A DNA stretch of 64,000 bases from Phyllobates terribilis (taxonomy: Eukaryota): NCBI RefSeq assembly GCF_046119375.1, contig NW_027362767.1:165044001-165108000 (forward strand), in the 5' to 3' direction. The translations under genes were made by a program, and so were the position numbers. Shown here in pieces: positions 11,883-64,000 of this stretch. How positions within the stretch are numbered: the stretch's first letter is position 1; each line of letters starts with the position of its first letter. The notes under the pieces were generated by a model that had not been told where the DNA came from, made no database searches, and worked only from the letters and a program-made list of their open reading frames with translations.

Positions 11883-12041
11883 GCCTTGCGGTGGACAGCC
11901 GAGCTCGATCCTTATAAAAGCTTTTTAACTGCAGCAGCTTTAGTGGACGCTACTGGAGCTGGAATTACCGCGGCTGCTGGCATGAGACTTGCCCTCCAAT
12001 AGATCCTTGTAAATGGATTTAAAGTGTATTCATTCAAATTA
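11883..12041 (-). rRNA. 18S rRNA fragment (~160 bp, mutated, non-functional) within the 3' subterminal region of hAT A1
   Basis: The reverse complement contains TTGGAGGGCAAGTCTCATGCCCAGCAGCCGCGGTAATTCCAGCTCCAGTAGCGT...GCTGCTGCAGTTAAAAAGCT, the conserved SSU 530-loop region. No other rDNA is adjacent. Confidence 0.9.
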
Positions 12042-12547
12042 GAGAGACAATTTAAATTAAAAAGCTTAGAGCTGCCTCCACCACAGGGGGGCTCGCTCGA
12101 CCCACCAGCGGACAGGCACCAGCATTGGGAGAGGGGGGCTGGCCGTCAGGGTTCACCGCGGCTCTGGCACAAACCCGGCGACACGGAGGTGGCACGGGCA
12201 GGAGCGGACTGGCCGTGTCGGCTTCTCACTTTTTGGATTTTAGAAGGGCATGACATGCCTATATCTGTGTCTCCCCCTCCTTTTACTCCTCCACCTCTTT
12301 TATTTTCGCATGACTATATGTACTTGTCACTTTTCCATGTGTTAGTTATGTCTTCTGAGCAGTTTGTCAGCTTTTGGACACCTTTGAAGGTGTTTTCTAT
12401 GTGTTTCTATGTGTTTTTGTTTGCCTGCCATTGGTTTTAACGGTGTTCGAAGGTGTTCGACGAACAGTTCGACGAACAGTTCGGCGAACACACGGGTGTT
12501 CGACGAACCGAACCGAACTCGAACACTACGGGGGTGGCTCAACACTA

Positions 12548-37997: not shown

Positions 37998-40689
37998 GTA
38001 GATAGGGTTTCCCTCTATGCCAGTCCTTTCACTGAGCTAAATACAACTATCAGCAAAAAAAGTTGTGGACTGGGTCCGTACCGTTCCTGGCCACGTTCTC
38101 CTGTCCATGTGTTTGTGGTTAGGCGGTCCTTCCCAGTAAGAACACTGGGTAGGGCACGGGTAATGTTGTGGGACCCATGCTTGTGGAAGACGGAGGCGAT
38201 ACCGGGAAATATAGTCGCGGCTGGGGACCGAGTATGGACACCCGGCCGCCACCGGCATGAGGTTGTGAAAAGCTTCTTCCTCCACGAGCTTAATAGGCCA
38301 CATTTCAAGTGCAAGCAGCTGTCAAAAATTTGGCAGTATAGTATTGCAGCCTGTGGGTGGGTGGGTGGGTGGCTGGCTGCCTGCATACTTGCGCTTGCAT
38401 TCCAAGGAATGGGGTAGGGACAACTGAACGCTGCAGTGGGACAAGGACGTGGATGGTGATTGTTGCAAGTCTGCAACGACAGGTGCATGGCGGGAGGCAT
38501 CTTCGCATGTGCCAAGGATCACTTATGATGGGCACAATTTTAGGCAGTGACCTGGAAGTCAGAGATGCTTCCAGAGGTCTTCCCTATGCAGTTCCCATGT
38601 CTTTTCAGCACTGTATACATGTGTCTGATGATGTGTCACACACCACATGGCCAAATAAGGTTGTAAAATGTTAAAATTACATTTCCCGGTGAATGCATTT
38701 GTTTTGGTTGAAAGCAATGCAAAAGTACAAAACCGCATCAAAAACGCAACGTGTGAACATAGCCCAAGGTGTGGAGGAGTATTTTTGGTTTTGGTTATTT
38801 ATTTTGTCTTCTATACAAGTCATTACCCTGGAAAGGATGTTCCTTAACATACAGTTATATGAAAAAGTTTGGGCACCCCTATTAATCTTAAGCTTAATGT
38901 TTTATAAAAATTGGTGTTTTTGCAACAGCTATTTCAGTTTGATATATGTAATAACTGTTGGACACAGTAATGTTTCTGCCTTGAAATGAGGTTTATTGTA
39001 CTAACAGAAAATGTGCAATCTGCATTCAAACAAAATTTGACTGGTGCATAAGTATGGGCACCTCACCAGAAAAGTGACATTAATATTTAGTAGATCCTCC
39101 TTTTGCAAAAATAACAGCCTCTAGTCACTTCCTGTAGCTTTTAATGAGTTCCTGGATCCTGGATGAAGGTATTTTTGACCATTCCTCTTTACAAAACAAT
39201 TCCAGTTCAGTTAAGTTTGATGATCGCCGAGCATGGACAGCCCTCTTCAAATGATCCCACAGATGTTCAAGGATATTCCGGTCTGGGGACTGGGATGGCC
39301 ATTCCAGAACATTGTAATTATTCCTCTGCATGAATGTCTGAGTAGATTTGGAGGGGTGTTTTGGATCATTGTCTTGCTGAAAGATCCATCCCCTGCGTAA
39401 CTTCAACTTTATCACTGATTCTTGAACATTATTGTCAGGAATCTGCTGATATTGAGTGGAATCCATGCGTCCCTCAACTTTAACAAGATTCCCGGTGCCG
39501 GTATTGGCCACACAGCCCCAAAGCATGATGGAACCTCCACCAAATTTTACTGTGGGTAGCAAGTGTTTTTCTTGGAATGCTGTGTTTTTTTGCCGCCATG
39601 CATAACGCCTTTTGTATGACCAAACAACTCAATCTTGGTTTCATCAGTCCACAGGACCTTCTTCCAAAAAGAAATTGGCTTCTCCAAATGTGCTTTTGCA
39701 TACCTCAACCGACTCTGTTTGTGGCGTGCTTGCTGAAACGGCTTCTTTCGCATCACTCTCCCATACAGCTTCTCCTTGTGCAAAGTGTGTTGTATAGTTG
39801 ACCGATGCACAGTGACACCATCTGCAACAAGTTGATGATGCAGCTCTCTGGAGGTGGTCTGAGGATTGTCCTTGACTGATCTCACCATTCTTCTTCTCTG
39901 CCTTTCTGATGTTTTTCTTGGCCTGCCACTTCTGGCCTTAACAAGAACTGTCCCTGTGTTCTTCCATTTCCTTACTATGTTCCTCACAGTGGAAACTGAC
40001 AGGTTAAATCTCTGATACAGCTTTTTGTATCCTTCCCCTGAACAACTATGTTGAATAATCTTTGTTTTCAGATCATTTGACAGTTGTTTTGAGGAGCCCA
40101 TGATGCCACTCTTCAGAGGAGGTTCAAACAGGAGAACAACTTGCAAGTGGCCACTTTAAGTAGCTTTTCTCATGATTGCATACACCTGGCTATGAAGTTC
40201 AAAGCTCAATGAGGTTACAAAACCAAAAAAAGTGCTTTAGTACGTCAGTAAAAAGTAGGTAGGAGTATTTAAAACAAGAAAATGATAAGGGTGCCCATAC
40301 TTATGCACCTCTCAAATTTTGTTTGAATGCAGATTGCACATTTTCTGTTAGTACAATAAACCTCATTTCAAGGCAGAAACATTACTGTGTCCAACAGTTA
40401 TTACTAGAGATGAGCGGTGTTCGACTAGAACTGTTCGCCAATCTCAAATTCGAGCTGTTTTGGGCGGTGTTCGAGTTGTTCGACGAACCCGAACGATTTG
40501 CAAAAAATTCGGCTGTTCAAGGTTATGTTCGATAACTGTTCGTGCACCAAAAGCGTGTCCTGCATGTCTGGCGCTATTTAGAGCACCAATCATGCAGGGA
40601 TTGTCTGCCACTCACTGTAATGCCACAGCCATGGTGGTTGTGGCATTACAGTGATTGCCCAAATCGATGGGAACAGTGCCAACAGTGAA

Positions 40690-41270
40690 ACATGAAAAGC
40701 CGGCAATTCAGCAGCGGCATACACCTGTACCCGACAATTTAGAACCGAAAGAATAGAGCTTCACACATAGATTAGATAGATATAAACATGTCAGCCACAT
40801 ATATACGAAGTACAGTGAAAGTGCTGCTTACTGTACTTGTCATTTAGCGTAAAGGATTTATCAAAAAAAATAATAGTGTTTTCATGCACCGTCTCTTTAA
40901 AAAAGCCGGCCGGCAATTCAGCATCTGTACCCGACAATTTAGAATAGAAAGAATAGAGAATCACACATAGATTAGATAGATAGAAACATGTCAGTCACAT
41001 ATATATGAAGTACAGTGACAGTGCTGCTTACTGTACTTGTCATTTAGCGTAAAGGATTTATCAAAAAAAATAATAGTGTTTTCATGCACCGTCTCTTTAA
41101 AAAAGCCGGCCGGCAATTCAGCAGCGGTACCCGACAATTTATAACAGACAGAATAGAGCTTCACACATAGATTAGATAGATAGAAACATGTCAGTCACAT
41201 ATATATGAAGTACAGTGATAGTGTTGGTTACTGTACTTGTCATTTAGTATTAAAATAAAGGATTTATTAT
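40690..41270 (-). repeat. 200-bp tandem repeat (3 copies) in the left arm of the palindromic element
   Basis: GTCATTTAG occurs at 40839, 41039 and 41239. Confidence 0.9.
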
Positions 41271-44200
41271 TAAAAAAATTGGCGTGGAGTTCCCCTTAAT
41301 TTTAGGCTCTAGCGGAGGTTAAGCAGACGGCTGGGGCAGATGTTTGAAGCCTGGGAAGGGGGTAATACCCACGGAGCTTCCCAGGCTACTAATATCAGCC
41401 CCCAGCTGAATACATAGCCTTTACTAGCTATTAAAATGGGGGACCCCCCCAAAAAAATGACGTGGGGTCCCCCCTAATTTAATAGCTAGCAAAGGCTAGG
41501 CAGACAGCTGGGGGCTGATATTAATAGCCCAGGAAGGGAGCCATGAATATTGGCCCCCTCCCAGGCTAGAAACACCAGCCGTCAGCCGCCCCAGAAATGG
41601 CGCATTCATAGGATGCGCCAATTCTGGCACTTAGCCTCGCTCTTCCACGCTGCCCTGGTGCGGTGGCAGGGGGTAATAGGGTTGGGGTTGATGTCAGCTT
41701 ATAATGCCAGCTGACATCAAGCCCAGGTTAGTAATGGAGAGGCGTCTATAAGACACCCCCATTACTAACCCCATAGTCAAAGTTAAAAAAAACACAAACA
41801 CCCAGAATAAAGTCCTTTAATTGAAATAAAGACACAATCCTTTATTGTTCTAAATTAAACCATACTTACCGTCACGCCCATTCCAGCTGAAGCCAACGAT
41901 CTCCTGCAATAAAAGAAAAATAATAAAGCAACCTCATCCTTACCTTTCCATGGTTCCCACGACAGCTTCAGCTCTGCTACATCGAGATGACAGGCTGGAC
42001 CGCAGCAGAACGCTGCCATCCAGCCTCTCATCCCGCAGACACTGAGAAGCGCAGGCTTGCTTGCGCTGCTCAGCGTCTCTCTGTGACGACATCCAGATGA
42101 GCCGAGTTCATGTCCAATGAACTCGGCTCACCTCATGCACGTCACTGACAGCGTGGGAAAATTCTCACGCTGAAGCGGTGAGTGCAGGAGAATTCTCCCA
42201 CGCTGTCAGTGACGTGCATAAGGTGAACTCATGTCCAATGAACTCAGCTCACCTCCTGCACGTCACTGACAGCGTGGGAGAATTCTCCTGCACTCAGCGC
42301 TTCAGCGTGAGAATTCTCCCACGCTGAAGCGCTGAGTGCAGGAGAATTTTCCCACGCTGTCAGTGACGTGCATAAGGTGAGCTCATGTCCAATGAACTCC
42401 GCTCACCTCCTGCACGTCACTGACAGCGTGGGAGAATTCTCCTGCACTCAGCGCTTCAGTGTGAGAATTCTCCCACGCTGAAGCGCTGAGTGCAGGAGAA
42501 TTTTCCCACGCTGTCAGTGACGTGCATGAGGTGAGCCGAGTTCATTGGACATTAACTCGGCTCATCTGGATGCCCTCACAGAGAGACACTGTGGAGCGCA
42601 AGCAAGCCTGCGCTTCTCAGTGTCTGCGGGATGACAGGCTGGATGGCAGCGTTCTGCTGCGGTCCAGCCTTTCATCTCGATGTAGCAGAGCTGAAGCTGT
42701 CATGGGAACCATGGAAAGGTAAGGATGATGTTGCTTTATTATTTTTCTTTTATTTCAGGAGATCGTTGGCTTCAGCTGGAATGGGCGTGATGGTAAGTAT
42801 GGTTTAATTTAGAACAATAAAGAATTGTGTGTTTATTTCAATTAAAGGACTTTTTTCTGGGTGTTGTGTTTTTTTTAAATACTTTACTAGAAATTCATGG
42901 TGGTCATGTCTAATATTGGCGTGACCCCATGAATTTCGGGCTTAGGGCCAGCTGATAATGCCAAGCTGGCCCTAACCCCTTCATTACCCAGTGAGCCACC
43001 GCATCAGGGCCCTGGATGAGTTGGGTACAGCGCCAGAAGATGGCGCTTCTATGAACGCGCCATTTTCCGGGGTGGCTGCGGACTGCAATTTGCAGCGGGG
43101 GTGGCCCAGAAAGCTTGGGCCTCCCTGCGCTGCGGATTCCAGCCCCCAGCTGCCTAGTTGTACCTGCCTGGACACAAAAACAGGGCGAAGCCCCACGTCA
43201 ATTTTCTTTAAATTATTTCATGAAATAATTAAGAAAAAAAGGGCTTCCCTATATTGTTGTGTCCGGCCAGGTACAAATAGGCAGCTGGTGGTTGGGGGCA
43301 GCCCGTTCCTGCCTGCTGTACCTGGCTGGACACAAATATAGTGCGAAGCCCCACGTCAATTTTTTTTAAATTATTTCATGAATTTCCTGAAATAATTTAA
43401 AAAAATTGAAGTGGGGCTTCGCACTATATTTGTGTCCAGCCAGGTACAGCAGGCAGGAACGGGCTGCCCCCATCCACCAGCTGCCTATTTGTACCTGGCC
43501 GGACACAACAATATAGGGAAGGCCTTTTTTTCTTAATTATTTCATGAATTTCATGAAATAATTAAAAAAAAAGTACGTGGGGCTTCGCCCTATTTTTGTG
43601 TCCAGCCAGGTACAACTAGGCAGCTGTGGGCTGGAATCTGCAGCGCAGGGAGGCCCAAGCTTTCTGGGCCCCCCCCCCGCTACAAATTGCAGTCCGCAGC
43701 CACCCCGGAAAATGGCGCGTTCATAGAAGCGCCATCTTCTGGCGCTGTACCCAACTCATCCAGGGCCCTGGTGCGGTGGCTCAATGGGTAATAAAGGGGT
43801 TAGGGCCAGCTTGGTATTATCAGCTGGCCCCAAGCCCAAAATTCATGGGGTCACGCCAGTATTAGACATGACCGCCATGAATTTCTAGTAAAGTATTTAA
43901 AAAAAACACAACACCCAGAATAAAGTCCTTTAATTGAAATAAAGACACAATTCTTTATTGTTCTAAATTAAACCATACTTACCATCACACCCATTCCAGC
44001 TGAAGCCAACGATCTCCTGCAATAAAAGAAAAATAATAAACCAACCTCATCCTTACCTTTCCATGGTTCCCACGACAGCTTCAGCTCTGCTACATCGAGA
44101 TGACTGGCTGGACCGCAGCAGAACGCTGCCATCCAGTCTGTCATCCCGCAGACACTGAGAAGCGCAGGCATGCTTGCGCTCCTCACTGTCTCGCTGTGAC

Positions 44201-45319
44201 GGCATCCAGATGAGCCGAGGTCATGTCCAATGAACTCGGCTTACCTCATGCACGTCACTGACAGCGTGGGAAAATTCTCACGCTGAAGTGCTGAGTGCAG
44301 GAGAATTCTCCCACGCTGTCAGTGATGTGCATGAGGTGAGCTCATGTCCAATGAACTCAGCTCACCTCCTGCACGTCACTGACAGCGTGGGAAAATTCTC
44401 CTGCAATCAGCGCTTCAGCGTGAGAATTTTCCCACGCTGCCAGTGACGTGCATGAGGTGAGCCGAGTTCATTGGACATGAACTCGGCTCATCTGGATGTC
44501 GTCACAGAGAGACGCTGAGCAGCGCAAGCAAGCCTGCGCTTCTCAGTGTCTGCGGGATGACAGGCTGGATGGCAGCGTTCTGCTGCGGTCCAGCCTGTCA
44601 TCTCGATGTAGCAGAGCTGAAGCTGTCGTGGGAACCATGGAAAGGTAAGGATGAGGTTGCTTTATTATTTTTCTTTTATTGCAGGAGATCGTTGGCTTCA
44701 GCTGGAATGGGCGTGATGGTAAGTATATTTTAATTTAGAACAATAAAGGATTGTGTCTTTATTTCAATTAAAGGACTTTATTCTGGGTGTTTGTGTTTTT
44801 TTAAACTTTGACTATGGGGTTAGTAATGGGGGTGTCTTATAGACGCCTCTCCATTACTAACCTGGGCTTGATGTCAGCTGGCATTATAAGCTGACATCAA
44901 CCCCAACCCTATTACCCCCTGCCACCACACCAGGGCAGCGTGGAAGAGCGAGGCTAAGTGCCAGAATTGGCGCATCCTATGAATGCGCCATTTCTGGGGC
45001 GGCTGACGGCTGGTGTTTCTAGCCTGGGAGGGGGCCAATATTCATGGCTCCCTTCCTGGGCTATTAATATCAGCCCCCAGCTGTCTGCCTAGCCTTTGCT
45101 AGCTATTAAATTAGGGGGGACCCCACGTCATTTTTTTTGGGGGGTCCCCCATTTTAATAGCTAGTAAAGGCTATGTATTCAGCTGGGGGCTGATATTAGT
45201 AGCCTGGGAAGCTCCGTGGGTATTACCCCCTTCCCAGGCTTCAAACATCTGCCCCAGCCGTCTGCTTAACCTCCGCTAGAGCCTAAAATTAAGGGGAACC
45301 CCACGCCAATTTTTTTAAT

Positions 45320-46105
45320 AATAAATCCTTTATTTTAATACTAAATGACAAGTACAGTAACCAACACTATCACTGTACTTCATATATATGTGACTGACAT
45401 GTTTCTATCTATCTAATCTATGTGTGAAGCTCTATTCTGTCTGTTATAAATTGTCGGGTACCGCTGCTGAATTGCCGGCCGGCTTTTTTAAAGAGACGGT
45501 GCATGAAAACACTATTATTTTTTTTGATAAATCCTTTACGCTAAATGACAAGTACAGTAAGCAGCATTGTCACTGTACTTCATATATATGTGACTGACAT
45601 GTTTCTATCTATCTAATCTATGTGTGAAGCTCTATTCTGTCTGTTATAAATTGTCGGGTACCGCTGCTGAATTGCCGGCCGGCTTTTTTAAAGAGACAGT
45701 GCATGAAAACACTATTATTTTTTTAAATAAATCCTTTACACTAAATGACAAGTACAGTAAGCAACACTATCACTGTACTTATTATATATGTGACTGACAT
45801 GTTTCTATCTATCTAATCTATGTGTGAAGCTCTATTCTTTCTGTTCTAAATTGTCGGGTACAGATGCTGAATTGCCGGCCGGCTTTTTTAAAGAGACGGT
45901 GCATGAAAACACTAATATTTTTTTTAATAAATCCTTTACACTAAATGACAAGTGCAGTAACCAACACTGTCACTGTGCTTCTTATATGTGTGACTGACAT
46001 GTTTCTATCTATCTAATCTATGTGTGATGCTCTATTCCTTCTTGTCTAAATTGTCGGGTACCGGTGTATGCCGCTGCTGAATTTGCCGGCCGGCTTTTTT
46101 AAAGA
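45320..46105 (+). repeat. 200-bp tandem repeat (~4 copies) in the right arm
   Basis: CTAAATGACAAGT occurs at 45341, 45541, 45741 and 45941. Confidence 0.9.
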
Positions 46106-47159
46106 GAGTGTTTTCTGAGCAGTTTGTCAGCTTTTGGACACCTTTGCAGGTGTTTTCTATGTGTTTCTATGTGTTTTTGTTTGCCTGCCATTGGTTTTAA
46201 CGGTGTTCGACGGTGTTCTAAGGTGTTCGACGAACAGTTCGACGAACAGTTCCTCGAACATCCCGGTGTTCGACGAACCGAACCGAACCCGAACACAACG
46301 GGGGTGGCTCAACACTAGTTATTACATATATCAAACTGAAATAGCTGTTGCAAAAACACCAATTTTTATAAAACATTAAGCTTAAGATAAATAGCGGTGC
46401 CCAAACTTTTTCATATAACTGTATTTCCCAGGAAAATCCATTTTGGTTTAGTTTTTGTATGTTTTATTGTGAGTCCGTAAAAGTGGTGTAATACTCTGAC
46501 AATGTTGTTAACAGCAGTGACCTGGGAGTCAGAAATGCTTCCAGGGGTCTTCCCCATGCTGTTCCCATGTCATTTGAGCACTGTTCCCATTGATTTGGGC
46601 AATTTTTAGGCCCTCTGCAGACCGCCGGGGGGAGCCGCCTGAAAAATGCTCTAGTTTTCCATAGACTTGCATTGGGCTCGTTGCTCGGGTCGAGCACCCG
46701 AGTATTCCAATTTGCTCGACCCGAGCAACGAGTACCCGAGCATTTTAGTGCTCGCTCATCACTAATCTCAAGCTCAATATCAATGCAATTAGGGAGGGTT
46801 TGGTCCTTTTTTTTTGCATTTTGGTCTTCAAAAATGGAAGAGTGGCCTGAGCTTGCCTGTCACGCCATGGCAGTTTTGTCATGCCCAGCAACCAGCATTC
46901 TCTCAGAATGAGTCTACAGCGCTGCGGGTGGTGTCCTGACAGATAAGCGCATTCGGCTGTACCCTGAAAGTGTAGAAAAACTAACTTTCATCAAGATTAA
47001 CAAGCCATGGATCTCCAAGGACTTTTGCACCCCAATCACAGACTGTGAAGACTAGGCAATGGTGTAGTTTTTAGTGTGCTGCATTGATCTCACGTTATTG
47101 CAGTCTGTGACCTTTGTCATGGATTTTGTGCCTGCTGTTGCTACTGCTGCTGATGTTGT

Positions 47160-47830
47160 CAATCATTTTTTGAAATGTGAAGACTGCTGTTGGGTCCCCA
47201 ATATACTATTTCTACTCTCGTGAAATTGATGCCACTTTGGTGGTGTCTGCCCCTAATTTTTGGAAATTTGAAGACTTCTGATTGGGTCTCCATTTGCTCG
47301 GTTGGCTGTAGTGGAAGAGGTGCCAGTGCCCTATTATACTAGGTGTACTCTGGTGACATTGATGCCACTTTGGTGGTGTTTGGCAATAATTTTTTGAAAT
47401 ATGGAGAATCCTGGTTGGATCTCCATCTGGCTTGTTTCCTGTAGTGGAAGGGGTGTCAGTGCCCCATTATACTATTTCTACTCTGGTGAATTTAATGACA
47501 CTTTAGTGTTGTATGGCAATATTTTTTTTGAAATGTGGAGACTCCTGGTCGGGTCTTCATCTGGTGTGTTTCCTGTAGTGGAAGGGGTGTCAGTATCCCA
47601 TTGTACTATTTCTACTCTGATGAAATTGATGCCACTTTAGTGGTGTGCGGCAGAAATTTTTTGAAATGTGGAGACTCCTGGTTGGGTCTCTATCTGCTGT
47701 GTTTCCTGTAGTAGAAGGAGTGTCAGCCCATTATACTATTTCTACTCTGGTGTAATTGATGCCACTTTAGTGGTGTGTGTCAATCATTTTTTGAAATGTG
47801 GAGACTCCCAGTTGAGTCTCTTTAATGCGT
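47160..47830 (+). repeat. ~132-bp tandem repeat (~5 copies) in the 3' region of hAT B
   Basis: The GATGCCACTTT motif occurs at ~47228, 47361, 47494, 47628 and 47758. Confidence 0.85.
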
Positions 47831-50800
47831 GTTGCCTGTAGCAGTAGGGTTCACAGACTGGCAGGCTTGCACTTACTTTCAGTCAACTACCTGTGTTACT
47901 ATCCTTAAATTTCTCTAGAAATAGTAGTCCACAATACTGATATTTGTGCCACCTGAGAAGGGCTGAGCAGAAAAGCAGCTTTAGCTGTTGGATGTGATAT
48001 CAGGGCTCCCAGCACAGCAGGCCTACACTGATCCCTCACCCACCTCGCCTTAATTTGAATTAAAATTAAAAGCTGGAAATGCTGACCCAGACCCTGATAC
48101 CTCCTGCATGGCTCATTGCTGATTGATTCTGTGCCGTTATAAAATTTGTACAGTGGGTCAATTGATGCCACTTTTCCTGGTGTCTCTCCCTAATTTTTGG
48201 GCAGCTTTTGGGCCTCTTTGAAGATGTTGTCTATGCGTTTGGTTTTGCCTCCCATTGAATCAAATGGGATTTTGATACTTTCGATGTACTGTTCGACGAA
48301 CATCGGGAAATTCATCAAGCACAACCGAATCAAACCTTGAAAGGTTCACTCATCTCTAGTCACAACATGGTCTACTTAGAACCCAAACCTGTTCAGAATG
48401 TAGATGGATGAAGAAGACATTGATCCAGATTCAGCAAGAATTTTCATACCGGTCTTGACGAGGGGACATCATGGAGTCAGAAGCACCTCATTAATTAAGA
48501 ATCATTCTTAATGAATCAGGCGCATTTGAAAAGTGAAAAACTAAAGAGATGAACTTGAATGTAAGTTGGTGTGCATGAAGTGTGTAGGCGCTTGTTCATA
48601 TTGGCCACTAAACAAACAAAACCTAAGATAAAAACAAAATAAGCAAATACCCTGCAGAAAATCAATTAATAACAGTAGCGCATGAAAATAATATAGGATG
48701 CTTAGTTAACATAATTTTGATCTAAAAAACGAAAAAGTTACCCCACCACGTCAAGGTGGCCCTATACGGGAAGGTCTAACCTCTAATATTAAAACCTTAC
48801 CATATCGTTTTAATATTAGAGGTTACTAATATTTTAATGCATTTTTTTTCTTTGAAAGTTAGTATTACATAGTATTTAAAAAATAGGGAACTGCTATATT
48901 TTTCCGGACTTAAGGATTTACACTTAGCTGTGGATAGAAAAATATACAAAACTTTTCATTTTTCTAAGATTTCATGTATACAGTATCAAATTTCATAGAA
49001 ATATGTTATGATACATAAAATAGAAATGAAATATTAATTTACAAATGAGATCAGCTGAGAATAGATAATGTTTGTTCACAAAAATCTCCAAATCGATTTC
49101 AGAAATGAGTTGGGAAATTTAAAAATTGCAAAGGGGATTAATAAGCAAGTGGTGTAAAATATATAAGGAGGTCACCTCACCATTCATATTTTGTAAGAAA
49201 GACAAGATGTTGCCCCACAGATTGCTCTGCATTACTTCAAAATTGGCTGTAAGTAGAACTGAACTAAAGATTATTTTTATCATTATGTATTTTAATTCTA
49301 TATTTACATATGTTTTTCTTTTGTATTTTTTATATTTTTATTATCCACATGACATTTATTTTTCATAAAAATAAGTTCAATAAAGAAAAATAATCTATAT
49401 ATTATAGTTGGCAAAGATCATAGATAACTCAATCCAAGTTGTTCATTGCCATAGTCAAAGCATCAAAATGATTAGACAAAGGAATTAGACTCTGCAATAT
49501 ACCAGTGATCAAGGGATCAAAAAATGAAAAAAAAAAAAAATGTTTAGAATTATAAAAAAATCAAAAGTAACACAAAACACATTTTTTTCCAATTACAAAA
49601 CAATTATTGTATATAAACCTAAAAGATAAAAAAAGTGCACAGGATTGGTATCGAAGACTAGAACAACCCATAGTATAATAATATAATTTTATAATCACTA
49701 GCCAAAATGTAAAAAAGTTTAGAAGGATTAAGAACATTTTTAATTGCTTGATAACATCAGTATTCCAAATTTTATTTGGAAATCTTTGTAGCTCTGGAGC
49801 AGTGATATTTCTTGCACATATTCTTTTTGGCTACACGGTTCTCATAATAGAAGAAGCCTCCATTGCACTGTCCAGGGTTGTGACTCAGCCACTTGTTCCC
49901 ACTTTGGATGTCGACCCAGATGATCCTTTCTTTCCCAGCTTTAGTTTTATTTGCATCCTTAGGTTGTTGATACAGCTGAATGAGAACGTGCCCTTGTTGC
50001 TCCGGTTCCCTGAGATCCTTACTTTGTCACGTGGCAACTCCTGACAAGACTCAGTTGGCCCAATGATGGCATCACACAGGAGCCTAAAGAGGCCAGGCTA
50101 GGTGGATAGTCTTAAATGACAACAGAGAAACGGATAAGTGAGTATGACTTTTTTGAAAAAAAATAAGAATTACACCCAGTATGATTTTGGTATAATTATA
50201 CTATATGGCGCACTGTTTTGGAGAGGAGATACATAACACTTCATATGGTGCTATGTTTGAGGAACAGTACTTGTGGCACTGATTTTTGAGGACAATATGT
50301 GGCAAAACTCACAATCGGGGGCTACTAGATTTGGAAGGCACAGTGTGTGACCCTTTCATATCACAGGGCACAATATGTAACTATTATGGTATATTCAGTA
50401 GAAATAGGGGTTTATCCAAAGTATTTTCACCAGAGAGGGTTCAAAGTATTTTCAATTACATAAAACACTTGGAAAAGTCATGTCATAAAGAGTGGCACAA
50501 CATTTTTAAAAATTTAGTATTTTCACACAAGTTACAAGCAGCTGTGCCAAAACAGGTAAAGCTGGGGTAGGACAGAGTGTGACTAAGCCCACCCATCAAA
50601 TTTATCAATAGTGCCGGCATTTATTACACCAGAAATGTGACTCCAGTCTTTGGTGAGATGTTTTCAGGTGAGGTGCACAAATGTGCATGACACTAATAAG
50701 ATGAGCCAAATTCATTAAATGGCGCGAGTCTCTTATTGAATTTTGCGAGTTTTATTCCTGCACAGTCCTCATTAAGACTGGTATACGAAATGTCAGTCTT

Positions 50801-52199: not shown

Positions 52200-52221
52200 T
52201 TATTTTCTCATTGTATAGCAG
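52200..52221 (+). promoter_or_regulatory. Candidate 3' splice acceptor (TAG/CAG tandem) of the OR 5'-UTR intron
   Basis: TTATTTTCTCATTGTATAG|CAG|GAATC lies 17-20 nt upstream of the ATG. 5'-UTR introns are typical of vertebrate ORs. Confidence 0.5.
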
Positions 52222-52237
52222 GAATCACTCAAATGTT

Positions 52238-56100: not shown

Positions 56101-56219
56101 CTAAACCCGGGGTGGGAACCTCCGTTTCACAATGACCTATTCTGCGGTCCCTGGGCAGATTCCCAGGGACCGCAGTGCTCGGGCCTGCAGCTGCATTTTG
56201 GCAATTGACGGCACTTTAA

Positions 56220-57053
56220 GGCTGCGTGCACGCGATACGTTTTTCATGCGTTTATGCTGCGGAATTTCCGCAGCGGAAACGCATCAAAAATGCATGGTAA
56301 TCCGCACCCCATGGTCCCCAATGGCATTCCGCAATGTCAATGCACATGCTGCGGATTTTTCCACAGCGTTTCTGCAGCGCTCATAAATCCGCAGCATGTT
56401 CATTAATTTTGCGGAAGCGCCGCCATTGACTTGCATTGAGACGCACATAATCCGTGTCTGTACATTTGTACAAGCGGATTATATGCATTTCAATGTGCGG
56501 ATGGTACCCAGTTCTGGAGGAGAGAAGACTCTCATCCAGACCTGGGTACTATTGTACCTGTGAAAAAAAGAATGAAATAAAAAATAAAGTTTATATTCAC
56601 CTGTCCGGCGGCCCCTGCAGCTCTTCTCCTTCCAGGACCTGAGATGACGTCGCGGTCATGTGACCGCAGGCTGTCTCGCGAGATGCCGGCAAGCCAGGAA
56701 GGAACCAGGAAGGAGCGCGACAGCAGACGCGGCGGCATCGGGGGTGAGTATAGCTTTATTTTTTTATTTTTACGGTCACACTGTATAAATCTTTGCCGTT
56801 TGCATGGATTTATACACTGTGACCTAGTTGTCAAGCACTTTCCAAGTGATGCTATCGCCTGGAAAGTGCTTGTCAGTCCGCATGCGGAAACACATGCGTT
56901 AACGCATGTGGATACGCATGTGAATCAGCATGTATTCCGCATGTATTCTGCAGGAAAAACGCATGCACAATCTGCATGCGTTTTTTCTGCCAGGGAGATG
57001 CAGAAATGCTGCAGAAATTTTCTGCTTCATTTCTGCATCGTGGGCACATAGCC
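56220..57053. mobile_element. PIF/Harbinger (Tourist-like) MITE
   Basis: TAA|GGCTGCGTGCACGCGATAC ... GCATCGTGGGCACATAGCC|TAA, an imperfect ~20-bp TIR with a 3-bp TAA TSD. Confidence 0.7.
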
Positions 57054-57550
57054 TAAACCCCCACTTTCACTGTGAGCATGCACACACATTGTTCAGTACT
57101 GAATACTGCATGCACATGCATTGCAGGATTACATCCTCAGGCTTGACAGTGCCAGTGTGAGGACATAATTTATGAGCGGAGTTAGTGTGCAATGCAATCC
57201 TGTCCCACAGATGAAGAGAGCAGCTGCATCCCCACCATCCCCAGTGATATCTATGCCCCCAGCCCTCCCCAGTGATGTCTATGCCCCACTGATGTCTATT
57301 CCCCCCAGCCCTCCCCAGGGATGTCTGTTCCCTCAAGCTCCCCCAGGGATATATATGCCCTCTGCCCTCCAAGTGATGTATATGCCACCAAGCCCTCCCC
57401 AGTACTATCTATACCCCCAGCCATCCCCAGTGATGTCTATGACCCTCAGCCCTTTGTAGAGATGTCTATGCCCCCCAGCCCACCCCAGTGATGTATTTGC
57501 CTTCTAGTCCTCCCCAGTCATGTCTATGCCCCCCATCCATCTTTAGTGAT

Positions 57551-58525
57551 TGTGAAGACCCGGGGTCTTCCATGGGCGCAATACCACTCAGACAACACAG
57601 GGTGAGGGTAAAAGAGTGTGGCAATACTTTATTGAACCACAAAGCAGACAATAAACAGATAGAACAGTCCCAGCATATACCCAAGATGGAAAAACTTTAC
57701 ACAGTCTCACCCTTACGCTCTGCTCGCGTGGGATAGAACAGCTGCGACTTTGGGACTTCCAGGGCCAACTACCTCAACCAGTGGCCCCCTGCTTTTGGCG
57801 GTCCCCCACAGAAAGATGGTAGCGTGAAGCTTAGGAAGCTAGCAGTCCATCGAAGTACAAGGCCAGGAGACCAGAGGGTTCCACCCTGGCCGCTCCAAGA
57901 GTTTCCATGAGGCCAGATGGCCGGCTGGTCCCAATCTGGCTTCTTCGAATGTCTCCATGGATTCCAGGCGACTGGTGGGTCCCTCCTGGCAACCCCAAAC
58001 AACATATCAATGGGGCCAGGCAACTTCATGATCCCAACCTGGTCTCCCCAAATATATCCATGTCTCTCTGATGGTCAATGGAGCAGATCCGCATCTTTCC
58101 AGTCAGGCCTATATACCCTTAGGCTAGAATCATGTAGAATCCAAATTTGTGTCTCTTTAGGTAAAGCCATGCTTCCAAGCTGATGGTGTGACAGGGTCTA
58201 AACCTTGACTCTCCTTGTAAAGTTTCTTTCTAATTTCTGCTTCAAGTCTCCCCTGCTACAGAAGCACATGTCCCTTTTAAGTACACATCCACAGGTTGGG
58301 GGGAAAGGGCAGCCTCATGTCTCATTGTTTAATGAATTTGCTTAGTTTGTCCTCGTGTCTTGTGAGTCAATAAGCCAGAGGGTCCACAAAGGTTAATCAA
58401 CATAATTAGCAAACATTCATTGTTCCACAGACCAATAGAAGTCAACACAAAGATAATAGTGTATTTCACTTGGATTAACAAATATAAACATCTAGCTGAT
58501 AAATATTTTAAGCTGTACGGTCACA
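57551..58525 (-). mobile_element. Solo LTR (975 bp)
   Basis: TGTGA...TCACA termini. Flanks GTGAT/CTGAT (4/5 TSD match). AATAAA on the minus strand at ~57626-57632. Confidence 0.65.
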
Positions 58526-59461
58526 CTGATGAATATGCCCCTGAGCCCTCTCTAGTGATGTATATGCCTTTTAGCCCTCCCCAGTCGTGCCTATGCCCCT
58601 CATCCCTCCTCAATGATATATATTCCCCCCTAGCCTCCTCCAAGGTATTTCTATTCACCCCAGCCCTCCCAGTGATGTATATGCCACCCAGCCCTCTCCA
58701 GTAATATCTATGCCACTAGTCGTACCTAGTGATGTATATACCCCCCAGCCCTTTGTAGTGATGTATAGGCCCCCTATCCCTCCCCAGTGATATATATGTC
58801 CCCCAGCCCTCCCAGTGATGTTTATGCCTTCTAGTCTTCCCCAGTCGTCCCTCCCCAGTGATATATATACCCCCGAGCCCTCTCCAGTGAAGTATATGCC
58901 CCCCAGCCCCCCAAGTGATGTCTATGCTCCCCACCCTTCCCAGTAATTTATATGCCTCCCAGCCCTCCCTAGTGAAGTCTATGCTCCCCACCCTCCCCAG
59001 TAATTTATATGTCCCCCAGCCCTCCCAGTGATGTTTATGCCTTCTAGTCTTCCCCAGTCGTCCCTCCCTAGTGATGTATATGCCCCCCTGCCCTTTCCAG
59101 TGATGTATATAGTCCCAGTGATGTCTATGCCACTCAGTCCACCCCAATGATGTATATGCCCCCAGCCCTCCATAGTGATTTATATGCCTCTAGCCCTCAC
59201 GAGTGATGAATATGAAACCCAGCACACCCCTGTGATGTACATGCCCACCAACCCTGCTTAGTGATGTACTGAATATGCCCTCCAGCCCTCACCAGTGATG
59301 TTTATGCCCCAGCCCTCCCCAGCGATGTCTATTCTCCCGATGATGTCTATGCCCCCAGCCCTCCCAGTGATTTATATGCCTCACCATCCTCCCAAGTGAT
59401 GTCTATGCTTCCCTGCCCTCTCCAGAGATGTATATGCCTCCAAGCTCTATCCAGTGATTTA

Positions 59462-59897
59462 CAGTACAGACCAAAAGTTTGGACACACCTTCTCATTTAT
59501 AGATTTTTCTGTATTTTCATGACTATGAAAATTGTACATTCACACTGAAGGCATCAAAACTATGAATTAACACATATGGAATTATATACTTAACAAAAAA
59601 GTGTGAAACAACTGAAAATATGTCTTATATTCTAGGTTCTTCAAAGTAGCCACCTTTTGCTTTGATGACTGCTTTGCACACCCTTGGCATTCTCTTGATG
59701 AGCTTCAAGAGGTAGTCACTGGAAATGGTTTTTGCTTCACAGGTGTGCCCTGTCAGGTTTAATAAGTGGGATTACTTGCCTTAAAAATGGGGTTGGGGCC
59801 ATCAGTTGTGTTGTGCAGAAGTCAGGTGGATACACAGCTGATAGTTCTACTGAATAGACTGTTAGAATTTGTATTATGGCAAGAAAAAAGAAGCTAT
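59462..59897 (+). mobile_element. Tc1 5' fragment (TIR, 5' UTR and first codons)
   Basis: TA|CAGTACAGACCAAAAGTTTGGACACACC. Ends just after ATGGCAAGAAAAAAG. Confidence 0.75.
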
Positions 59898-60929
59898 ATG
59901 CCCCCCAACCCTCCACAGTGATGTCTATGACCCCAGCCCGGCTTAGAGATATCTATGCCCACCAGCCCTCCCAGTGATGTCTGTAGTCCCATACCTTCCC
60001 AGTGATGTCTAGACTAGAGATGAGCGTTGTTCTACTCGAACTGTTCGCCAATCTCAAATTCGAGCTGTTTTGGGCGGTGTTCGAGCCGGTCGGCGAACAC
60101 AAACAATTTGAGAAAAATTCGGCTGTTCGAGGTTATGTTCGATAACTGTTCGTGCACCAAAATCATAACTGGATTTTTTCTCAGTAATGATGAAAATTAA
60201 TGTTAATACGCAGTTTGAGTGTACAGCGGGGCGGGGGGAGGGGCAGGGGATGGATCTCTGCAGGAACAATGAAGATCTCCATTTTTTTTTCTCTTTCCCG
60301 CATTTGCAGTGGGGAGGTGCAATCTGTCAGCCTATCAGCAGCGCACACACGGAGCGAAGTGCTTTTTTTCACACAAGCAAGGGCATGTCTGATTGGCAGT
60401 GTATGTCACATGTCCTTGTCCTATAAGACCAAGCCATTTTCCCCGTCGCCACCATTTTCTCACTGCTGCAGCTGCGTGTTAGACGGCACCGCTGTTGCTG
60501 TGTGCGCTATACCTTGTTAATTTCAAGCCAATTTTTGCACAAATATACAGATAGCTTGGGAGTAGGGAATAGTTGTGATTGCAGTCCTTTTAAGGACTAG
60601 GTTACAGCATTTCCTACGACTTTTATCAAGCAGGTCTGTGCTCTTAAATAGATAGATTGTGGGAGTAAAGACTAATTGTAATTGGAGTCCTTTTCAGGAC
60701 TAGGATACATCAGTTCCTATCAGTTTTTGCCAGGCAGGTCTGTACCAGTGCTGTGCAAGTTTTTTTCACAGCATTTGGCTGAATCTAGCAAAGCTAATCC
60801 TTTTTGGCCTATTGCAGAGTGTGTTAGTCAGTGGAGTAGCCTATCTGTGTTGCAAGATATACCACCTGTGTATAGAATACCAATTTTTTTACTGCACCTA
60901 GTGAAGTAAAATCTTTTGGGCTTAGCATC

Positions 60930-61660
60930 ATTCTATTAGTCCATCTATACTGACCTCCATCAGGTTGCAAATTAAAAATAATTTTTTTCTGCATCTAGCT
61001 CTGAAAAAATATTTGGGCTTCTAGCAGTGTGTGGGACTTGGTCTATTAGTCCATCTATACTGACCTCCATCAGGTTGCAAATTAAAAATAATTTTTTTCT
61101 TCATTTATCTCTGAAAAAATATATGGGCTTCTAGCAGCGTGTGGGACTTGTTCTATTAGTCCATCTATACTGACCTCCATCAGGTTGCAAATTAAAAATA
61201 ATTTTTTTCTGCATCTAGCTCTGAAAAAATATTTGGGCTTCTAGCTGTGTGTGGGACTTGTTCTATTAGTCCTTCTATACTGACCTCCAGCAGGTTGCAA
61301 ATTGAATATAATTTTTTTCTGCATCTAGCTCTGAAAAAATATTTGGGCTTCTAGCGGTGTGTGGGACTTGGTCTTTTAGTCCATCTATACTGACCTCCAT
61401 CAGGTTGCAAATTAAAAATAATTTTTTTCTGCATCTAGCTCTGAAAAAATATTTGGGCTTCTAGCAGTGTGTGGGACTTGGTCTATTAGTCCATCTATAC
61501 TGACCTCCATCAGGTTGCAAATTGAATAAAAAAAATTTCTGCATCTAGCTCTGAAAAAATATTTGGGCTTCTAGCGGTGTGTGGGACATGGTCTATTAGT
61601 CCATCTATACTGACCTCCATCAGGTTGCAAATTAAAAATAATTTTTTTCTGCATCTAACC
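60930..61660 (+). repeat. 110-bp family-A satellite (7 monomers)
   Basis: CTGACCTCCA occurs at 60950, 61060, 61170, 61280, 61390, 61500 and 61610. Confidence 0.95.
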
Positions 61661-61773
61661 CAGCCAATAGTTTTGGCCTAATACCACAGTTTGGCCACTC
61701 AGCTCTGCTCGGTTACCATCCATTGTTTTTTTGTGCAAACAACTCCAGAGTTGTGAATTAGTTAACCACCAAA

Positions 61774-64000
61774 ATGAGTGGAAAAAGGCCTGCTGCTGGT
61801 GGAAAGGGGAATAGGCGTGTTGGGAAGGGGAAAAAAGGTTGTGTCAAACTAAAATGTCTACTTCTTTTAGCGGACAATGTGATAAGATCCCTTTCTTACG
61901 GCCACGCCAATCGCTACAAATTCCAGATGAGGCACAAAAACAGCAGGTGCTTCAACGGATATCAAGTGCTCCTTTAAGTGGGCTCTCCTCCACATCAACT
62001 TCAACATCACAAATACTCCAGTCCTCAAAGGTGTCACCCAAATCGCACTTGCTTCCTCACAGCTCCCAAATCTCCAGCTGCCCGTCTGAGTATGAGGTAG
62101 AACAGATGGTTGAGTCTGCAGAGCTGTTTACTCATACTATAGCCTGGGAATCAGAGGTCGACTCCAGCGCTTCTGTGAATCCAGACGAGGAAATGATCTG
62201 CACTGATGCCCAGAATCTTTATGAGTCGGATCCAGGACCAGACGCAGAAGGTTCTGACCATAATGTAGACCCTCATTCCCAAACTGTAACTCCTGTTGGT
62301 GGAGACAATGAGGAAGACGATGATAAGACTCAAATACCTGATTGGAGCGACAACTTTAGTTTTTTGTCAGGGCAGGAACAGGTTGGCTCTGAGGACGACG
62401 GGTGTGATAACGCACAGGGTGATGATGATGAGGTCGGAGATCCCACTTACTGTCAACCCACAGTCAGCCAAGAGATGAGGTCAGCAGAGGAGGTGGAGGA
62501 AGATGCTAGTGACGACGAGGTCAGGTTGCGCCGTCCTGGACAGAGACGTAGTACTGGAAGCACGTCAACAACTGCATCCTCAAACACAACTCTGCCTCTC
62601 ACCACAAGTCGTGGTGGCTCTTCAGGTCGCATGGGTGCTAAGCCTTGCATAGCCTGGGCATTTTTTCAGATCGATAAAGATGACCCAACTCGTGTTATCT
62701 GTAACATTTGTCAGCAAAAGCTAAGTAGAGGCCAAAAAATACATAGTTTGAGTACTTCATGCATGAACCGGCACATGGACATGAAGCATAAGTTGCAGTG
62801 GGAAGCTCAGTGTGCTACAATGCGGTCTAGCCGGCCGGGCCAACCACCGTCTGCCATATCTTGTGCATCCGCGGCCTCTTCATCCTCTGTGACTGGGGTG
62901 ACAGCAGTCACACCTGTTTTGGGGCGCAGACCTGCCACCTCTTTACCCGCAACAGCCAGCGTGATTGGCAGGTCATCATTTTCTTTGGAGGTGGTAACAC
63001 CATCTGGTCTTGAGCGCTGTCCGACATCGATAGCACCACCTTTGGATCAAGGCAACCTAACATGTCCGCCTGCATCTTCCTCACAGACCGGCAGTTTGCC
63101 GGGGACACCCTTATCAACCCCGTCTAAGCACAATAGCCAACCGTCGGTCCCTCAGATGTGGACAAGTAAAAGACCATTTCCTCCTAGCCATGAGAAAGCT
63201 AAGAGGTTGAATTTCACCATCTGCAAGCTCTTGGCTACAGAAATGCTGCCTTTCCGCCTGGTGGACACAGAGGATTTTCGAGACCTTATGTCCGTCGCAG
63301 TGCCCCAGTACCAGATGCCCAGTCGGCACTACTTCTCAAAGAAAGGTGTGCCTGCGCTCCACCAGCATGTCACACACAACATCACCGCTTCTTTGAGAAA
63401 CTCTGTGTGTGACAGGGTGCATTTCACCACAGGCACTTGGACGAGTAGGCATGGACAGGGGCGTTACATGTCGCTGACTGGGCACTGGGTAACTATGGTG
63501 ACAGCAGGACAAGGGGCTGCTGTCCAAGTCTTGCCGTCCCCACGAGTTGTGCGTCAATCCTCTTTATGTCAAAGTTCCTCCACTGCTTCTGCCTCCTCAT
63601 CCTCCTCTCGGTCTTCCACCTGCACCCAAAGCCTGTCTGGTCATGCCACAAGCTTTCTAACTGCGCAGAAGGGATCCTGCACACCTCCTTACTATGCTGG
63701 CAGTAGGGCTCAACGTCATCAGGCGGTTTTTACATTGAAATGTCTGGGAAATGTGAGTCACACAGCTGAGGAGTTGTGGTCAGCTCTGGAGAACCAATTT
63801 CATGAATGGTTGTCTCCACTGGACCTGAAACCAGGGAAGGCCGTGTGCGACAATGCTGCAAACCTGGGTGCGGCCCTTCGCCGGGGCAATGTCACACACG
63901 TGCCTTGTATGGCTCACGTGTTGAACCTGGTTGTCCAGCAATTTTTAGCCCACTATCCCAGACTAGATGGCCTTCTGCAGAGGGCACGGTCGCTGTGTGC
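61774..64000 (+). CDS. hAT transposase A2: a 58-bp deletion frameshifts the first ATG; frame apparently open from ATG 61854 (Met47 equivalent) to the window end
   Basis: The offset to A1 is 57402 at the ATG and 57344 from there to the window end. The same BED, TW and CDN/CMAH motifs are present, but the first catalytic Asp codon reads GGC (TTGTW) at ~63432. Confidence 0.75.

What the first reader, a model, noticed from the sequence alone, without database searches (positions are those of the whole stretch)
40405..64000. The palindromic element shares both termini with the young transposase-bearing family A in the same window
Seen: its left ~150 bp (TAGAGATGAGCGGTGTTCGACTAGAACTGTTCGCCAATCTCAAATTCGAGCTG...) matches the left end of A2 at 60015. 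Its right ~200 bp matches the right end of A1 (12350-12547). Inference: the family-A transposase is the mobilising enzyme, so the window holds a candidate enzyme-plus-substrate pair, of interest as a large-cargo hAT system.
Basis: partly seen in the sequence, partly recalled or inferred. Interest (0 to 1): 0.7.

Follow-up and report, generated by a model that had tools for sequence, protein, structure and literature searches.

The report
Hitch-hiker hAT transposon sharing family-A ends
A 5.9-kb non-coding transposon filled by a palindrome, in a frog-type genome, has the same 150-200-bp end sequences as a very abundant transposase-coding hAT family in the same window; this is the ordinary helper and hitch-hiker relationship known since maize Ac/Ds.

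Summary
The element at 40405-46317 (5913 bp) has a perfect 8-bp target duplication (GTTATTAC). A natural empty site lies in the other inverted repeat of the Tc1-like element it landed in.

- **Left end:** its first 148 bp are 91% identical to the left end of A2 (60015-60162).
- **Right end:** its last 209 bp are 95.5% identical, with one 10-bp indel, to the right end of A1 (12349-12547).
- **Extent:** similarity stops sharply there, far beyond the 11-bp TIR. Between the ends lie a 146-bp linker and a 5409-bp palindrome with no ORF.
- **Family A:** it encodes a BED plus hAT-dimerisation transposase that aligns to Hermes.
- **The TAG at 7036:** it is private to copy A1. About 99.8% of contig depth in public reads shows other letters there.

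The best reading is an Ac/Ds-type non-autonomous hAT moved in trans by an A-type transposase. There are three caveats.

- The ends are 4.5-9% diverged, while A1 and A2 are 99.1% alike, so an older A sublineage may be the true partner.
- Both A copies in the window are defective.
- "Large cargo" is not special, since Tol2 carries about 70 kb.

First-stage notes of this scan report similar palindrome-filled hATs on other DNA of this genome. This is an ordinary new member of a known kind.

The parts
40405..46317 (+). Pal: complete non-autonomous hAT element of 5913 bp
   Evidence: It has TIR-like ends, TAGAGATGAGCG... and ...GGCTCAACACTA. It has perfect 8-bp TSDs. No ORF exceeds 116 aa, there is no Pfam hit, and tblastn with the A transposase finds nothing.
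40397..40404 (+). Left copy of the target-site duplication GTTATTAC
46318..46325 (+). Right copy of the target-site duplication GTTATTAC
40405..40552 (+). A-type left end of Pal (148 bp), with 8 TGTTCG-type motifs
   Evidence: It is 91.2% identical to A2 60015-60162 and 98.6% identical to P2.
40553..40698 (+). Linker without an inverted partner; not A-derived
   Evidence: 40559-40657 is 82% like 17573-17675, which lies at a similar offset inside an X-type left end. 40654-40682 is 93% like X ends at 46574-46603 and 12722-12749.
40699..46107 (.). 5409-bp nested palindrome filling Pal's interior
   Evidence: Every base has an inverted partner inside the element. The outer arms 40722-42326 and 44262-45866 are 97% alike, and 42496-44279 is self-complementary at 94%. 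It includes 200-bp tandem repeats.
46109..46317 (+). A-type right end of Pal (209 bp), with 11 TGTTCG-type motifs
   Evidence: It is 95.5% identical to A1 12349-12547, with one extra 10-bp motif copy.
35010..36662 (-). P2: truncated second copy of the Pal family (left end plus 1.65 kb), head-to-head with Pal 3.7 kb away
   Evidence: It is 96.9% identical to 40405-42056. The terminus is at 36662 with flank ATCCTTAT. No right end is present, and homology breaks at 35010.
38948..38955 (-). Natural empty site: a single GTTATTAC in the other inverted repeat of the Tc1-like host element
   Evidence: 40290-40404 matches 39062-38948 at 98.3%, and 46318-46424 matches 38955-38849 at 98.1%. The two matches overlap by exactly the 8 bp.
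38850..46423 (-). T: Tc1/Sleeping-Beauty-like element (1653 bp without Pal and its TSD) that hosts Pal in one of its 214-bp inverted repeats; T itself sits in an X-type hAT copy at a TA
   Evidence: Pfam hits HTH_SB, HTH_Tnp_Tc3_2 and DDE_3 on the minus strand. The TIRs are 98.1% alike. TA flanks were read.
60015..64000 (+). A2: family-A copy with its left end; it runs off the window
   Evidence: The terminus is at 60015 with flank GTCTAGAC. 61845-64000 is 99.1% identical to A1 4501-6656. The partial ORF has no stops over 718 codons.
2493..12547 (+). A1: family-A copy with its right end; the left end is not recognisable in the window
   Evidence: A 110-bp repeat array at 2493-4255 matches A2 60931-61657. 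The right terminus is at 12547 with flank GTCATTAC. A2 60163-60930 has no counterpart here.
4372..8073 (+). Family-A transposase reading frame: 888 codons, TAG at 7036-7038, then 343 codons in the same frame
   Evidence: Pfam zf-BED at aa 313-359 (E 9.5e-10) and Dimer_Tnp_hAT (E 9.5e-16). Both pieces align to Hermes transposase, showing the D..N, CxxH, TRWNST and SERvFS motifs. The stop is private to this copy.
12349..12547 (+). A-type right end of A1
60015..60162 (+). A-type left end of A2

Best explanation
The element at 40405-46317 is a non-autonomous member of the family-A clade of hAT transposons. It keeps only the roughly 150-bp left and 210-bp right cis-acting ends of an A-type element: an 11-bp imperfect TIR plus clusters of TGTTCG repeats. 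Its interior is replaced by a linker and a 5.4-kb nested palindrome that codes for nothing.

It moved as a unit by cut-and-paste, making the 8-bp staggered target duplication typical of hAT. It used a transposase supplied in trans by an A-type autonomous element, a BED-finger, Hermes-like enzyme with a hAT dimerisation domain.

Shown: the homology of the ends, the insertion event, the lack of coding capacity, and the nature of the family-A protein. Inferred: that the BED/transposase protein binds the TGTTCG repeats, and that the helper was family A itself rather than a close, older A sublineage. I put that last choice at about even odds.
For: - Shared ends: 148 bp at 91.2% and 199-209 bp at 95.5% (E 1e-54 and 1e-75). 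Both start at base 1 of the termini and stop sharply.
- Motifs: TGTTCG occurs 7-12 times per end against about 1 per kb in the window.
- Insertion: perfect 8-bp TSD, plus an empty-site paralogue carrying a single copy of the 8 bp.
- Target preference: the four A/Pal flanks read here (GTTATTAC, GTCATTAC, GTCTAGAC, ATAAGGAT) all fit nTnnnnAn. From memory (Arensburger et al. 2011), that is the Ac-group hAT preference.
- No coding capacity: no ORF over 116 aa, no Pfam hit, no tblastn match to the transposase inside the element.
- A second family copy (P2) shares the same left end at 98.6%.
- Other hAT families in the window share only the TIR core or short stretches. X has CTCGGG/CCCGAG-type subterminal repeats. 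The right end of E matches at 82% over only 39 bp.
- Family A protein: BED plus Dimer_Tnp_hAT, with Hermes alignments.
- Family A is young and extremely repeated. In one DNA run 175,613 contigs were laid on 3.9 kb, 77,927 of them at 99% identity or more. The stop at 7036 is absent from about 99.8% of contig depth.
- The lengths of the shared ends match the cis-requirement measured for the hAT element Tol2: 200 bp left and 150 bp right (PMC2768751).
Against: - The ends differ from the A1/A2 ends by 4.5-9%, while A1 and A2 differ by 0.9%. About half of the left-end differences are not at CpG sites. Three of the eight TGTTCG motifs in the left end are not conserved between Pal and A2.
- The interior is not a deletion derivative of family A. 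The linker resembles an X-type element instead, so the history involves more than simple internal deletion.
- No activity of any kind is shown. The one RNA run with raw reads gave no reads and is no test.
- Only one copy of each A end is available in the window.
Confidence: 0.8

Rival explanations
1. The helper was an older or sister A-like sublineage, and the young A1/A2 lineage no longer recognises these ends, or never did. On this view the pair in the window is historical rather than a working enzyme-substrate pair.
For: - The ends are 4.5-9% diverged, against 0.9% between A1 and A2.
- Pal and P2 differ by 3.1%, which is older than the A1/A2 split.
- The read set holds 72,300 contigs at 95-99% and 25,386 at 90-95% identity to the A transposase region, so older A sublineages exist.
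- An A-like relative, E, with TGTTCG motifs lies in the same window.
Against: - The first 12 bases on the left and the last 15 on the right are identical, and most TGTTCG motifs are kept.
- Cross-mobilisation across larger differences is documented: hobo moves Hermes, and Pong moves mPing (as reviewed in PMC3517528).
- Pal inserted after the Tc1-like element T, whose inverted repeats differ by only 1.9%. Its last move is therefore not much older than the family-A burst.
Confidence: 0.4
2. A different hAT family of the window (X/C/D, B or E) supplies the enzyme, and the resemblance to family A is incidental to mobilisation.
For: All these families share the TIR core TAGnGnTGAG. Pal's linker resembles an X-type left end.
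Against: The subterminal regions, which hAT transposases need, match only family A. X ends carry different repeats, and E matches only short stretches at 82%. The B, C and X transposase remnants in the window are heavily decayed, at 27-63% aa identity to A in fragments.
Confidence: 0.06
3. The shared ends reflect duplication or recombination of one locus, or an assembly artefact of a palindrome, rather than independent transposition of two related elements.
For: - The right flanks of A1 and of Pal are homologous: 12579-12912 against 46422-46764 at 89%. The two TSDs differ by one base.
- Long palindromes can be assembly artefacts.
Against: - The flank homology is explained. Both elements sit in copies of the X family, but Pal lies inside a Tc1-like element nested in X, 107 bp from its end. 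A1 lies directly in X, 26 bp from the equivalent TA.
- Pal has its own perfect TSD and an empty-site paralogue.
- The palindrome arms are 94-97% identical, not 100%, and P2 independently confirms 1.65 kb of the arm.
Confidence: 0.03

Closest known systems
Maize Ac/Ds, the autonomous and non-autonomous hAT pair (own knowledge)
   Same: A non-coding element keeps the TIR and about 200 bp of subterminal repeat-rich sequence of a transposase-coding hAT. It makes 8-bp target duplications and depends on the enzyme in trans.
   Different: The interior is not a deletion derivative of the helper. It is an unrelated 5.4-kb nested palindrome plus a linker resembling another hAT family. The host is an animal (frog-type). 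The ends are 4.5-9% diverged from the helper copies seen here.
Tol2 of medaka, a vertebrate hAT used as a vector (PMC2768751)
   Same: It is a vertebrate hAT. Short asymmetric end regions (200 bp left, 150 bp right) suffice in cis and any cargo can lie between them. The shared ends here are of the same size.
   Different: Tol2 activity and its cargo capacity (about 10 kb efficiently, about 66-70 kb possible) are shown by experiment, whereas nothing is shown here. The family-A protein is much longer (about 1230 codons, ZBED4-like in length).
Cross-mobilised non-autonomous elements: hobo/Hermes, Ping/Pong/mPing, Mar MITEs (PMC3517528)
   Same: A helper can act on ends that are similar but not identical to its own. 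TSD consensus and end similarity are the usual grounds for assigning a helper.
   Different: Pal, at 5.9 kb, is not a MITE. The helper here is assigned on about 150-200 bp of homology rather than on TIRs alone.
Foldback (FB-type) elements and hairpin silencers such as maize Mu killer (own knowledge)
   Same: Long inverted repeats make up most of the element.
   Different: The palindrome does not reach the termini, which are the asymmetric A-type left and right ends. It contains no family-A sequence, so a hairpin RNA from it would not target the A transposase.

Membership tests
hAT superfamily (family A and Pal) | 8-bp target-site duplication | tested here: met
   Perfect GTTATTAC on both sides of Pal, and a single copy at the empty-site paralogue 38948-38955.
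hAT superfamily (family A and Pal) | Short, imperfect terminal inverted repeats | tested here: met
   TAGAGATGAGC against TAGTGTTGAGC gives 9 of 11 matches. The same ends occur at 5 termini, and the pattern is found 7 times against 0.39 expected.
hAT superfamily (family A) | Transposase with BED zinc finger, RNase-H-like catalytic core carrying the CxxH and RW motifs, and a C-terminal hAT dimerisation domain | tested here: met
   Pfam zf-BED 38.8 bits and Dimer_Tnp_hAT 57.8 bits, both above cut-off. Hermes alignments show D..N, pCmaH, TRWNST and SERvFS. The first catalytic Asp was not covered by the alignment.
Ac group of hAT, as against Buster | TSD consensus nTnnnnAn (Ac group, from memory) rather than nnnTAnnn (Buster, PMC3517528) | tested here: met
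   All four flanks (GTTATTAC, GTCATTAC, GTCTAGAC, ATAAGGAT) have T at position 2 and A at position 7. Only one has TA at positions 4-5. The sample is small and no phylogeny was made.
Non-autonomous (Ds-like) partner of family A | No transposase gene | tested here: met
   The longest ORF is 116 aa, there are no Pfam hits, and tblastn with the A transposase finds nothing in 40405-46317.
Non-autonomous (Ds-like) partner of family A | Both ends homologous to those of the autonomous element beyond the TIR | tested here: met
   148 bp at 91.2% and 199-209 bp at 95.5%.
Non-autonomous (Ds-like) partner of family A | Mobilised in trans by that element's transposase | not testable with these tools
   This needs a binding or excision assay, or co-segregation data. 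Only the past insertion event is shown.
Non-autonomous (Ds-like) partner of family A | Interior derived from the autonomous element by deletion | tested here: not met
   There is no similarity to A between the ends. The linker resembles an X-type element. This feature holds for classic Ds but not for all non-autonomous elements.
MITE | Small size (a few hundred bp) | tested here: not met
   The element is 5913 bp.
Foldback element | Long inverted repeats that form the termini themselves | tested here: not met
   40405-40698 and 46108-46317 have no inverted partner, so the palindrome is internal.

The most novel reading that the evidence does not exclude
Family A may be a currently active, very high-copy vertebrate hAT of about 10 kb. 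Its intact 1.2-thousand-residue transposase would still move 6-kb partners that are almost entirely a long palindrome. If so, this would be a natural vertebrate cut-and-paste system that tolerates, and spreads, DNA that is normally unstable. It would be a second Tol2-like tool candidate and a way to study how long palindromes survive in a giant genome.
Probability: 0.2. Interest if true: 0.5.

Novelty: new member of a known kind. Interest (0 to 1): 0.25.

Why it matters
The finding gives a clean, well-bounded example of an autonomous and non-autonomous hAT pair in a large, transposon-rich frog-type genome. It has a TSD, an empty site and asymmetric cis-ends.

It also delimits which 148 bp and 209 bp are likely to be the cis-acting ends of a very abundant, young hAT family. 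That helps repeat annotation in such genomes, and it helps anyone who wants to test this family for activity.

It does not open a new question. Trans-mobilisation through shared ends and large hAT cargo are both established.

Tried and rejected
- **Locus duplication.** I suspected it because the right flanks of A1 and Pal are homologous and their TSDs differ by one base. I rejected it after resolving the nest X > Tc1-like T > Pal and finding the empty site in T's other inverted repeat.
- **One giant X element.** I asked whether 22515(+) and 46764(-) are the two ends of a single 24-kb X element. Their flanks, GTGTTTAT and ATCTCAAG, do not match, so I dropped it.
- **Right end for P2.** I looked for one and found none. 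Homology simply breaks at 35010.
- **A1's left end.** I looked for it in the window. A2 60163-60930 has no counterpart.
- **Rfam.** A scan of 34000-47500 found nothing.
- **RNA evidence.** The only raw-read RNA run offered (another organism label) laid no reads, so it is no test. The two small runs guessed to be RNA cannot be told from DNA.
- **Protein word search.** The 888-aa piece gave only chimeric dendrobatid gene models (75-81% identity over 12-15% of the query) and a ZBED4-like fish protein. No intact annotated orthologue appeared.
- **No repaired frame.** The two ORF pieces were searched separately.
Full report
**What the window is.** It holds no N runs and is packed with decayed and young DNA transposons. 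The closest proteins to its main transposase are gene models from dendrobatid poison frogs (Ranitomeya, Phyllobates) at 75-81% identity on fragments, and a ZBED4-like fish protein at 21%. [quoted passage not shown]

**Checking the observation.**
- A self-comparison of the window gives 40403-40552 against 60013-60162 at 91% over 150 bp, and 12349-12555 against 46109-46325 at 91% over 217 columns.
- Exact global alignments give 148 bases with 13 mismatches and no gaps for the left end (91.2%). For the right end they give 199 bases with 9 mismatches and one 10-bp indel (95.5%); the indel is an extra copy of a GGTGTTC-type motif.
- The first 12 bases on the left and the last 15 on the right are identical.
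- In a three-way alignment the left homology runs from base 1 to base 148 and then stops dead. On the right it begins at 46109/12349.
- With a 7-base word and a loose threshold, these ends match nothing else in the window beyond short stretches.

**The element is a real insertion.**
- It spans 40405-46317 (5913 bp) between two perfect copies of GTTATTAC.
- Its left flank 40290-40404 and right flank 46318-46424 both reappear, inverted, at 39062-38948 and 38955-38849, at 98% identity. The two matches overlap by exactly eight bases.
- That site is the other long inverted repeat of a Tc1/Sleeping-Beauty-like element, T. T spans 38850-46423 including its TA flanks and measures 1653 bp once the insertion is removed. 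Pfam finds HTH_SB, HTH_Tnp_Tc3_2 and DDE_3 on its minus strand.
- T's own symmetry thus supplies a natural empty site with a single copy of the 8 bp. T in turn sits at a TA inside a copy of another hAT family, X, whose terminus is at 46764.

**Why the right flanks of A1 and Pal are homologous.** The right flanks match (12579-12912 against 46422-46764, 89%) and the two TSDs differ by one base. A1 is inserted directly into another X copy at GTCATTAC, 26 bp from the TA that T used in the first X copy. These are independent insertions into two copies of one repeat, not a duplicated locus.

**Anatomy of the element.** Every base from 40699 to 46107 (5409 bp) has an inverted partner inside the element. 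Only 40405-40698 and 46108-46317 do not.
- Right side: the non-palindromic part is exactly the A-type end.
- Left side: it is the A-type end (148 bp) plus a 146-bp linker. The linker is not A-derived. 40559-40657 is 82% like 17573-17675, which lies at a similar offset inside an X-type left end (TAGTGATGAGTG at 17455). 40654-40682 matches X ends at 93%.
- Coding capacity: no ORF exceeds 116 aa, there is no Pfam hit, no Rfam hit, and no tblastn match to the transposase.
- Second copy: P2 (35010-36662, minus strand) carries the same left end, linker and arm at 96.9% identity, but breaks off at 35010 without a right end.

**The ends.**
- Each A-type end carries 7-12 copies of GTTCG/CGAAC, mostly as TGTTCGA, within about 140 bp. 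The window average is about 1 per kb.
- Clusters of short subterminal repeats are the usual transposase-binding sites of hAT elements (own knowledge, from Ac and Tol2 work).
- The shared lengths, 148 and 209 bp, are those found sufficient in cis for Tol2: 200 bp left and 150 bp right (PMC2768751).
- The other hAT families of the window share only the TIR core TAGnGnTGAG. X ends carry CTCGGG/CCCGAG-type repeats. An A-like remnant, E (46816-48358), has TGTTCG motifs but matches Pal's right end only at 82% over 39 bp.

**Family A.**
- A2 (60015 onward) gives the left end, and A1 (to 12547) gives the right end. They overlap at 99.1% identity over 2156 bp.
- Joining A2 60015-61844 to A1 4501-12547 suggests a unit of about 9.9 kb. 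This is inference, and A1's 3' part may hold nested fragments.
- The reading frame is 888 codons, then TAG at 7036-7038, then 343 codons in the same frame.
- It has a BED finger and a hAT dimerisation domain above Pfam's cut-offs. Both pieces align to the Hermes transposase, showing the D..N, CxxH, TRWNST and SERvFS signatures.
- The four A/Pal flanks all have T at position 2 and A at position 7. That fits the Ac group (from memory) and not the Buster consensus nnnTAnnn (PMC3517528).

**State of the two A copies.**
- A1 has the stop, and no recognisable left end lies in the window.
- A2 runs off the window. It lacks 57 bp present in A1, and its frame is open only from 61815.
- Of the 19 differences between them, 16 change the amino acid, as expected for neutral decay of individual copies.

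**Public reads.**
- Runs of the same coded organism hold 97-98% of the sampled words of 4372-8073. Small runs labelled as two other organisms hold 87%.
- I laid contigs on 4300-8200. One DNA run gave 175,613 contigs: 77,927 at 99% identity or more, 72,300 at 95-99%, and 25,386 at 90-95%. The family is therefore extremely repeated and has both young and older layers.
- At 7035 and 7036 about 99.8% of that run's contig depth, and the single contigs of two other runs, read other letters. The stop of A1 is private to this copy.
- No indel reached a 10% share.
- These are contigs, not reads, so they give no copy number and no expression evidence. The one raw-read RNA run laid nothing and is no test.
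- I built no consensus and no repaired frame.

**Interpretation.** The simplest account is the classical one: a non-autonomous hAT that retains the cis-ends of an A-type element and is moved in trans.
The ends are 4.5-9% diverged from A1/A2, whereas A1 and A2 differ by 0.9%. The interior has a mosaic origin.
- On the other side, Pal inserted after T, whose inverted repeats differ by only 1.9% (4 of 214). Cross-mobilisation over greater differences is documented (PMC3517528).
- I therefore give 0.8 to "moved by an A-type transposase" and about even odds on the young A lineage against an older A sublineage.
- "Large cargo" adds nothing. Pal is smaller than family A, and Tol2 moves about 66-70 kb.
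- The palindrome cannot act as a Mu-killer-like silencer of family A, because it holds no family-A sequence.

**Earlier notes of this scan (unchecked leads).** First readers reported palindrome-filled non-autonomous hATs of 5.86-5.87 kb and other sizes on other pieces of this genome. One was matched to a transposase-bearing element in the same window, and another note describes a giant hAT with an intact 1226-aa transposase.
- These notes agree with my reading that Pal is a multi-copy family.
- They also agree with the read evidence that the stop at 7036 is not a family trait.
- I could not inspect those stretches.

**Verdict.** The feature is real and cleanly bounded, and it is ordinary. It is a new member of a known kind. 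Interest 0.25.

Noticed in passing
window 38850-46423 and 46424-46764: Three-level nest. An X-type hAT copy holds a Tc1/Sleeping-Beauty-like element with 214-bp inverted repeats (98.1% alike), and that element holds the palindromic hAT in one of its repeats. The other repeat serves as a natural empty site.
   Followed up: yes
window 12548-12912 against 38810-38850 and 46424-46764: A1 and the Tc1-like element entered two different copies of the X family only 26 bp apart, in the same subterminal stretch. This may be a local insertion hot spot or chance.
   Followed up: partly
window 17455-17760: An X-type left end (TAGTGATGAGTG) cuts the C-terminal part of a decayed family-B transposase (15015-17484, about 49% aa identity to A). 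Its 17573-17675 is 82% like the linker of the palindromic element, at a similar offset from the terminus. The hAT families here therefore share mosaic subterminal pieces.
   Followed up: partly
window 46816-48358: Remnant of an A-like family, E. It has a C-terminal transposase piece (60% aa identity to A), 133-bp tandem repeats at 47124-47856, and a right end with TGTTCGACGAACA motifs ending ..CACTCATCTCTA at 48358, with flank GTCACAAC.
   Followed up: partly
window 19384-22481 and 26252-31268: Two copies of a further hAT transposase family (C) lie in inverted orientation at 80-85% identity around a 3.8-kb spacer that holds an X-type end at 22515.
   Followed up: no
window 35010-36662 and 40405: P2 and the palindromic element lie head-to-head, with their left termini facing each other across 3.7 kb, inside the same X copy. 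P2 lacks a right end. This could be local reinsertion followed by deletion, or an aberrant transposition product.
   Followed up: partly
window 4444-4500 against 61845; 61815: A2 lacks 57 bp that A1 has at the 5' end of the reading frame, and its frame is open only from 61815. Of the 19 A1/A2 differences over 2156 bp, 16 change the amino acid.
   Followed up: yes
window 8839-9438 (minus strand): A weak Tc3-type HTH match (below Pfam's cut-off) inside the 3' part of A1. It suggests a nested or captured Tc1-like fragment in family A's long 3' region.
   Followed up: no
window 4300-8200 (public runs): Contigs from a run labelled as another organism cover the family-A transposase region in pieces of 1.2-1.4 kb with only 4-7 differences. 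A third organism label holds 87% of the words, and two more hold about 27%. This could be close relatives, mislabelling, or recent spread between species.
   Followed up: no
window 57221-60008: A2 is inserted at the edge of a long array of degenerate 28-29-bp repeats (CCCAGTGATGTCTATGCCCCC-type).
   Followed up: no
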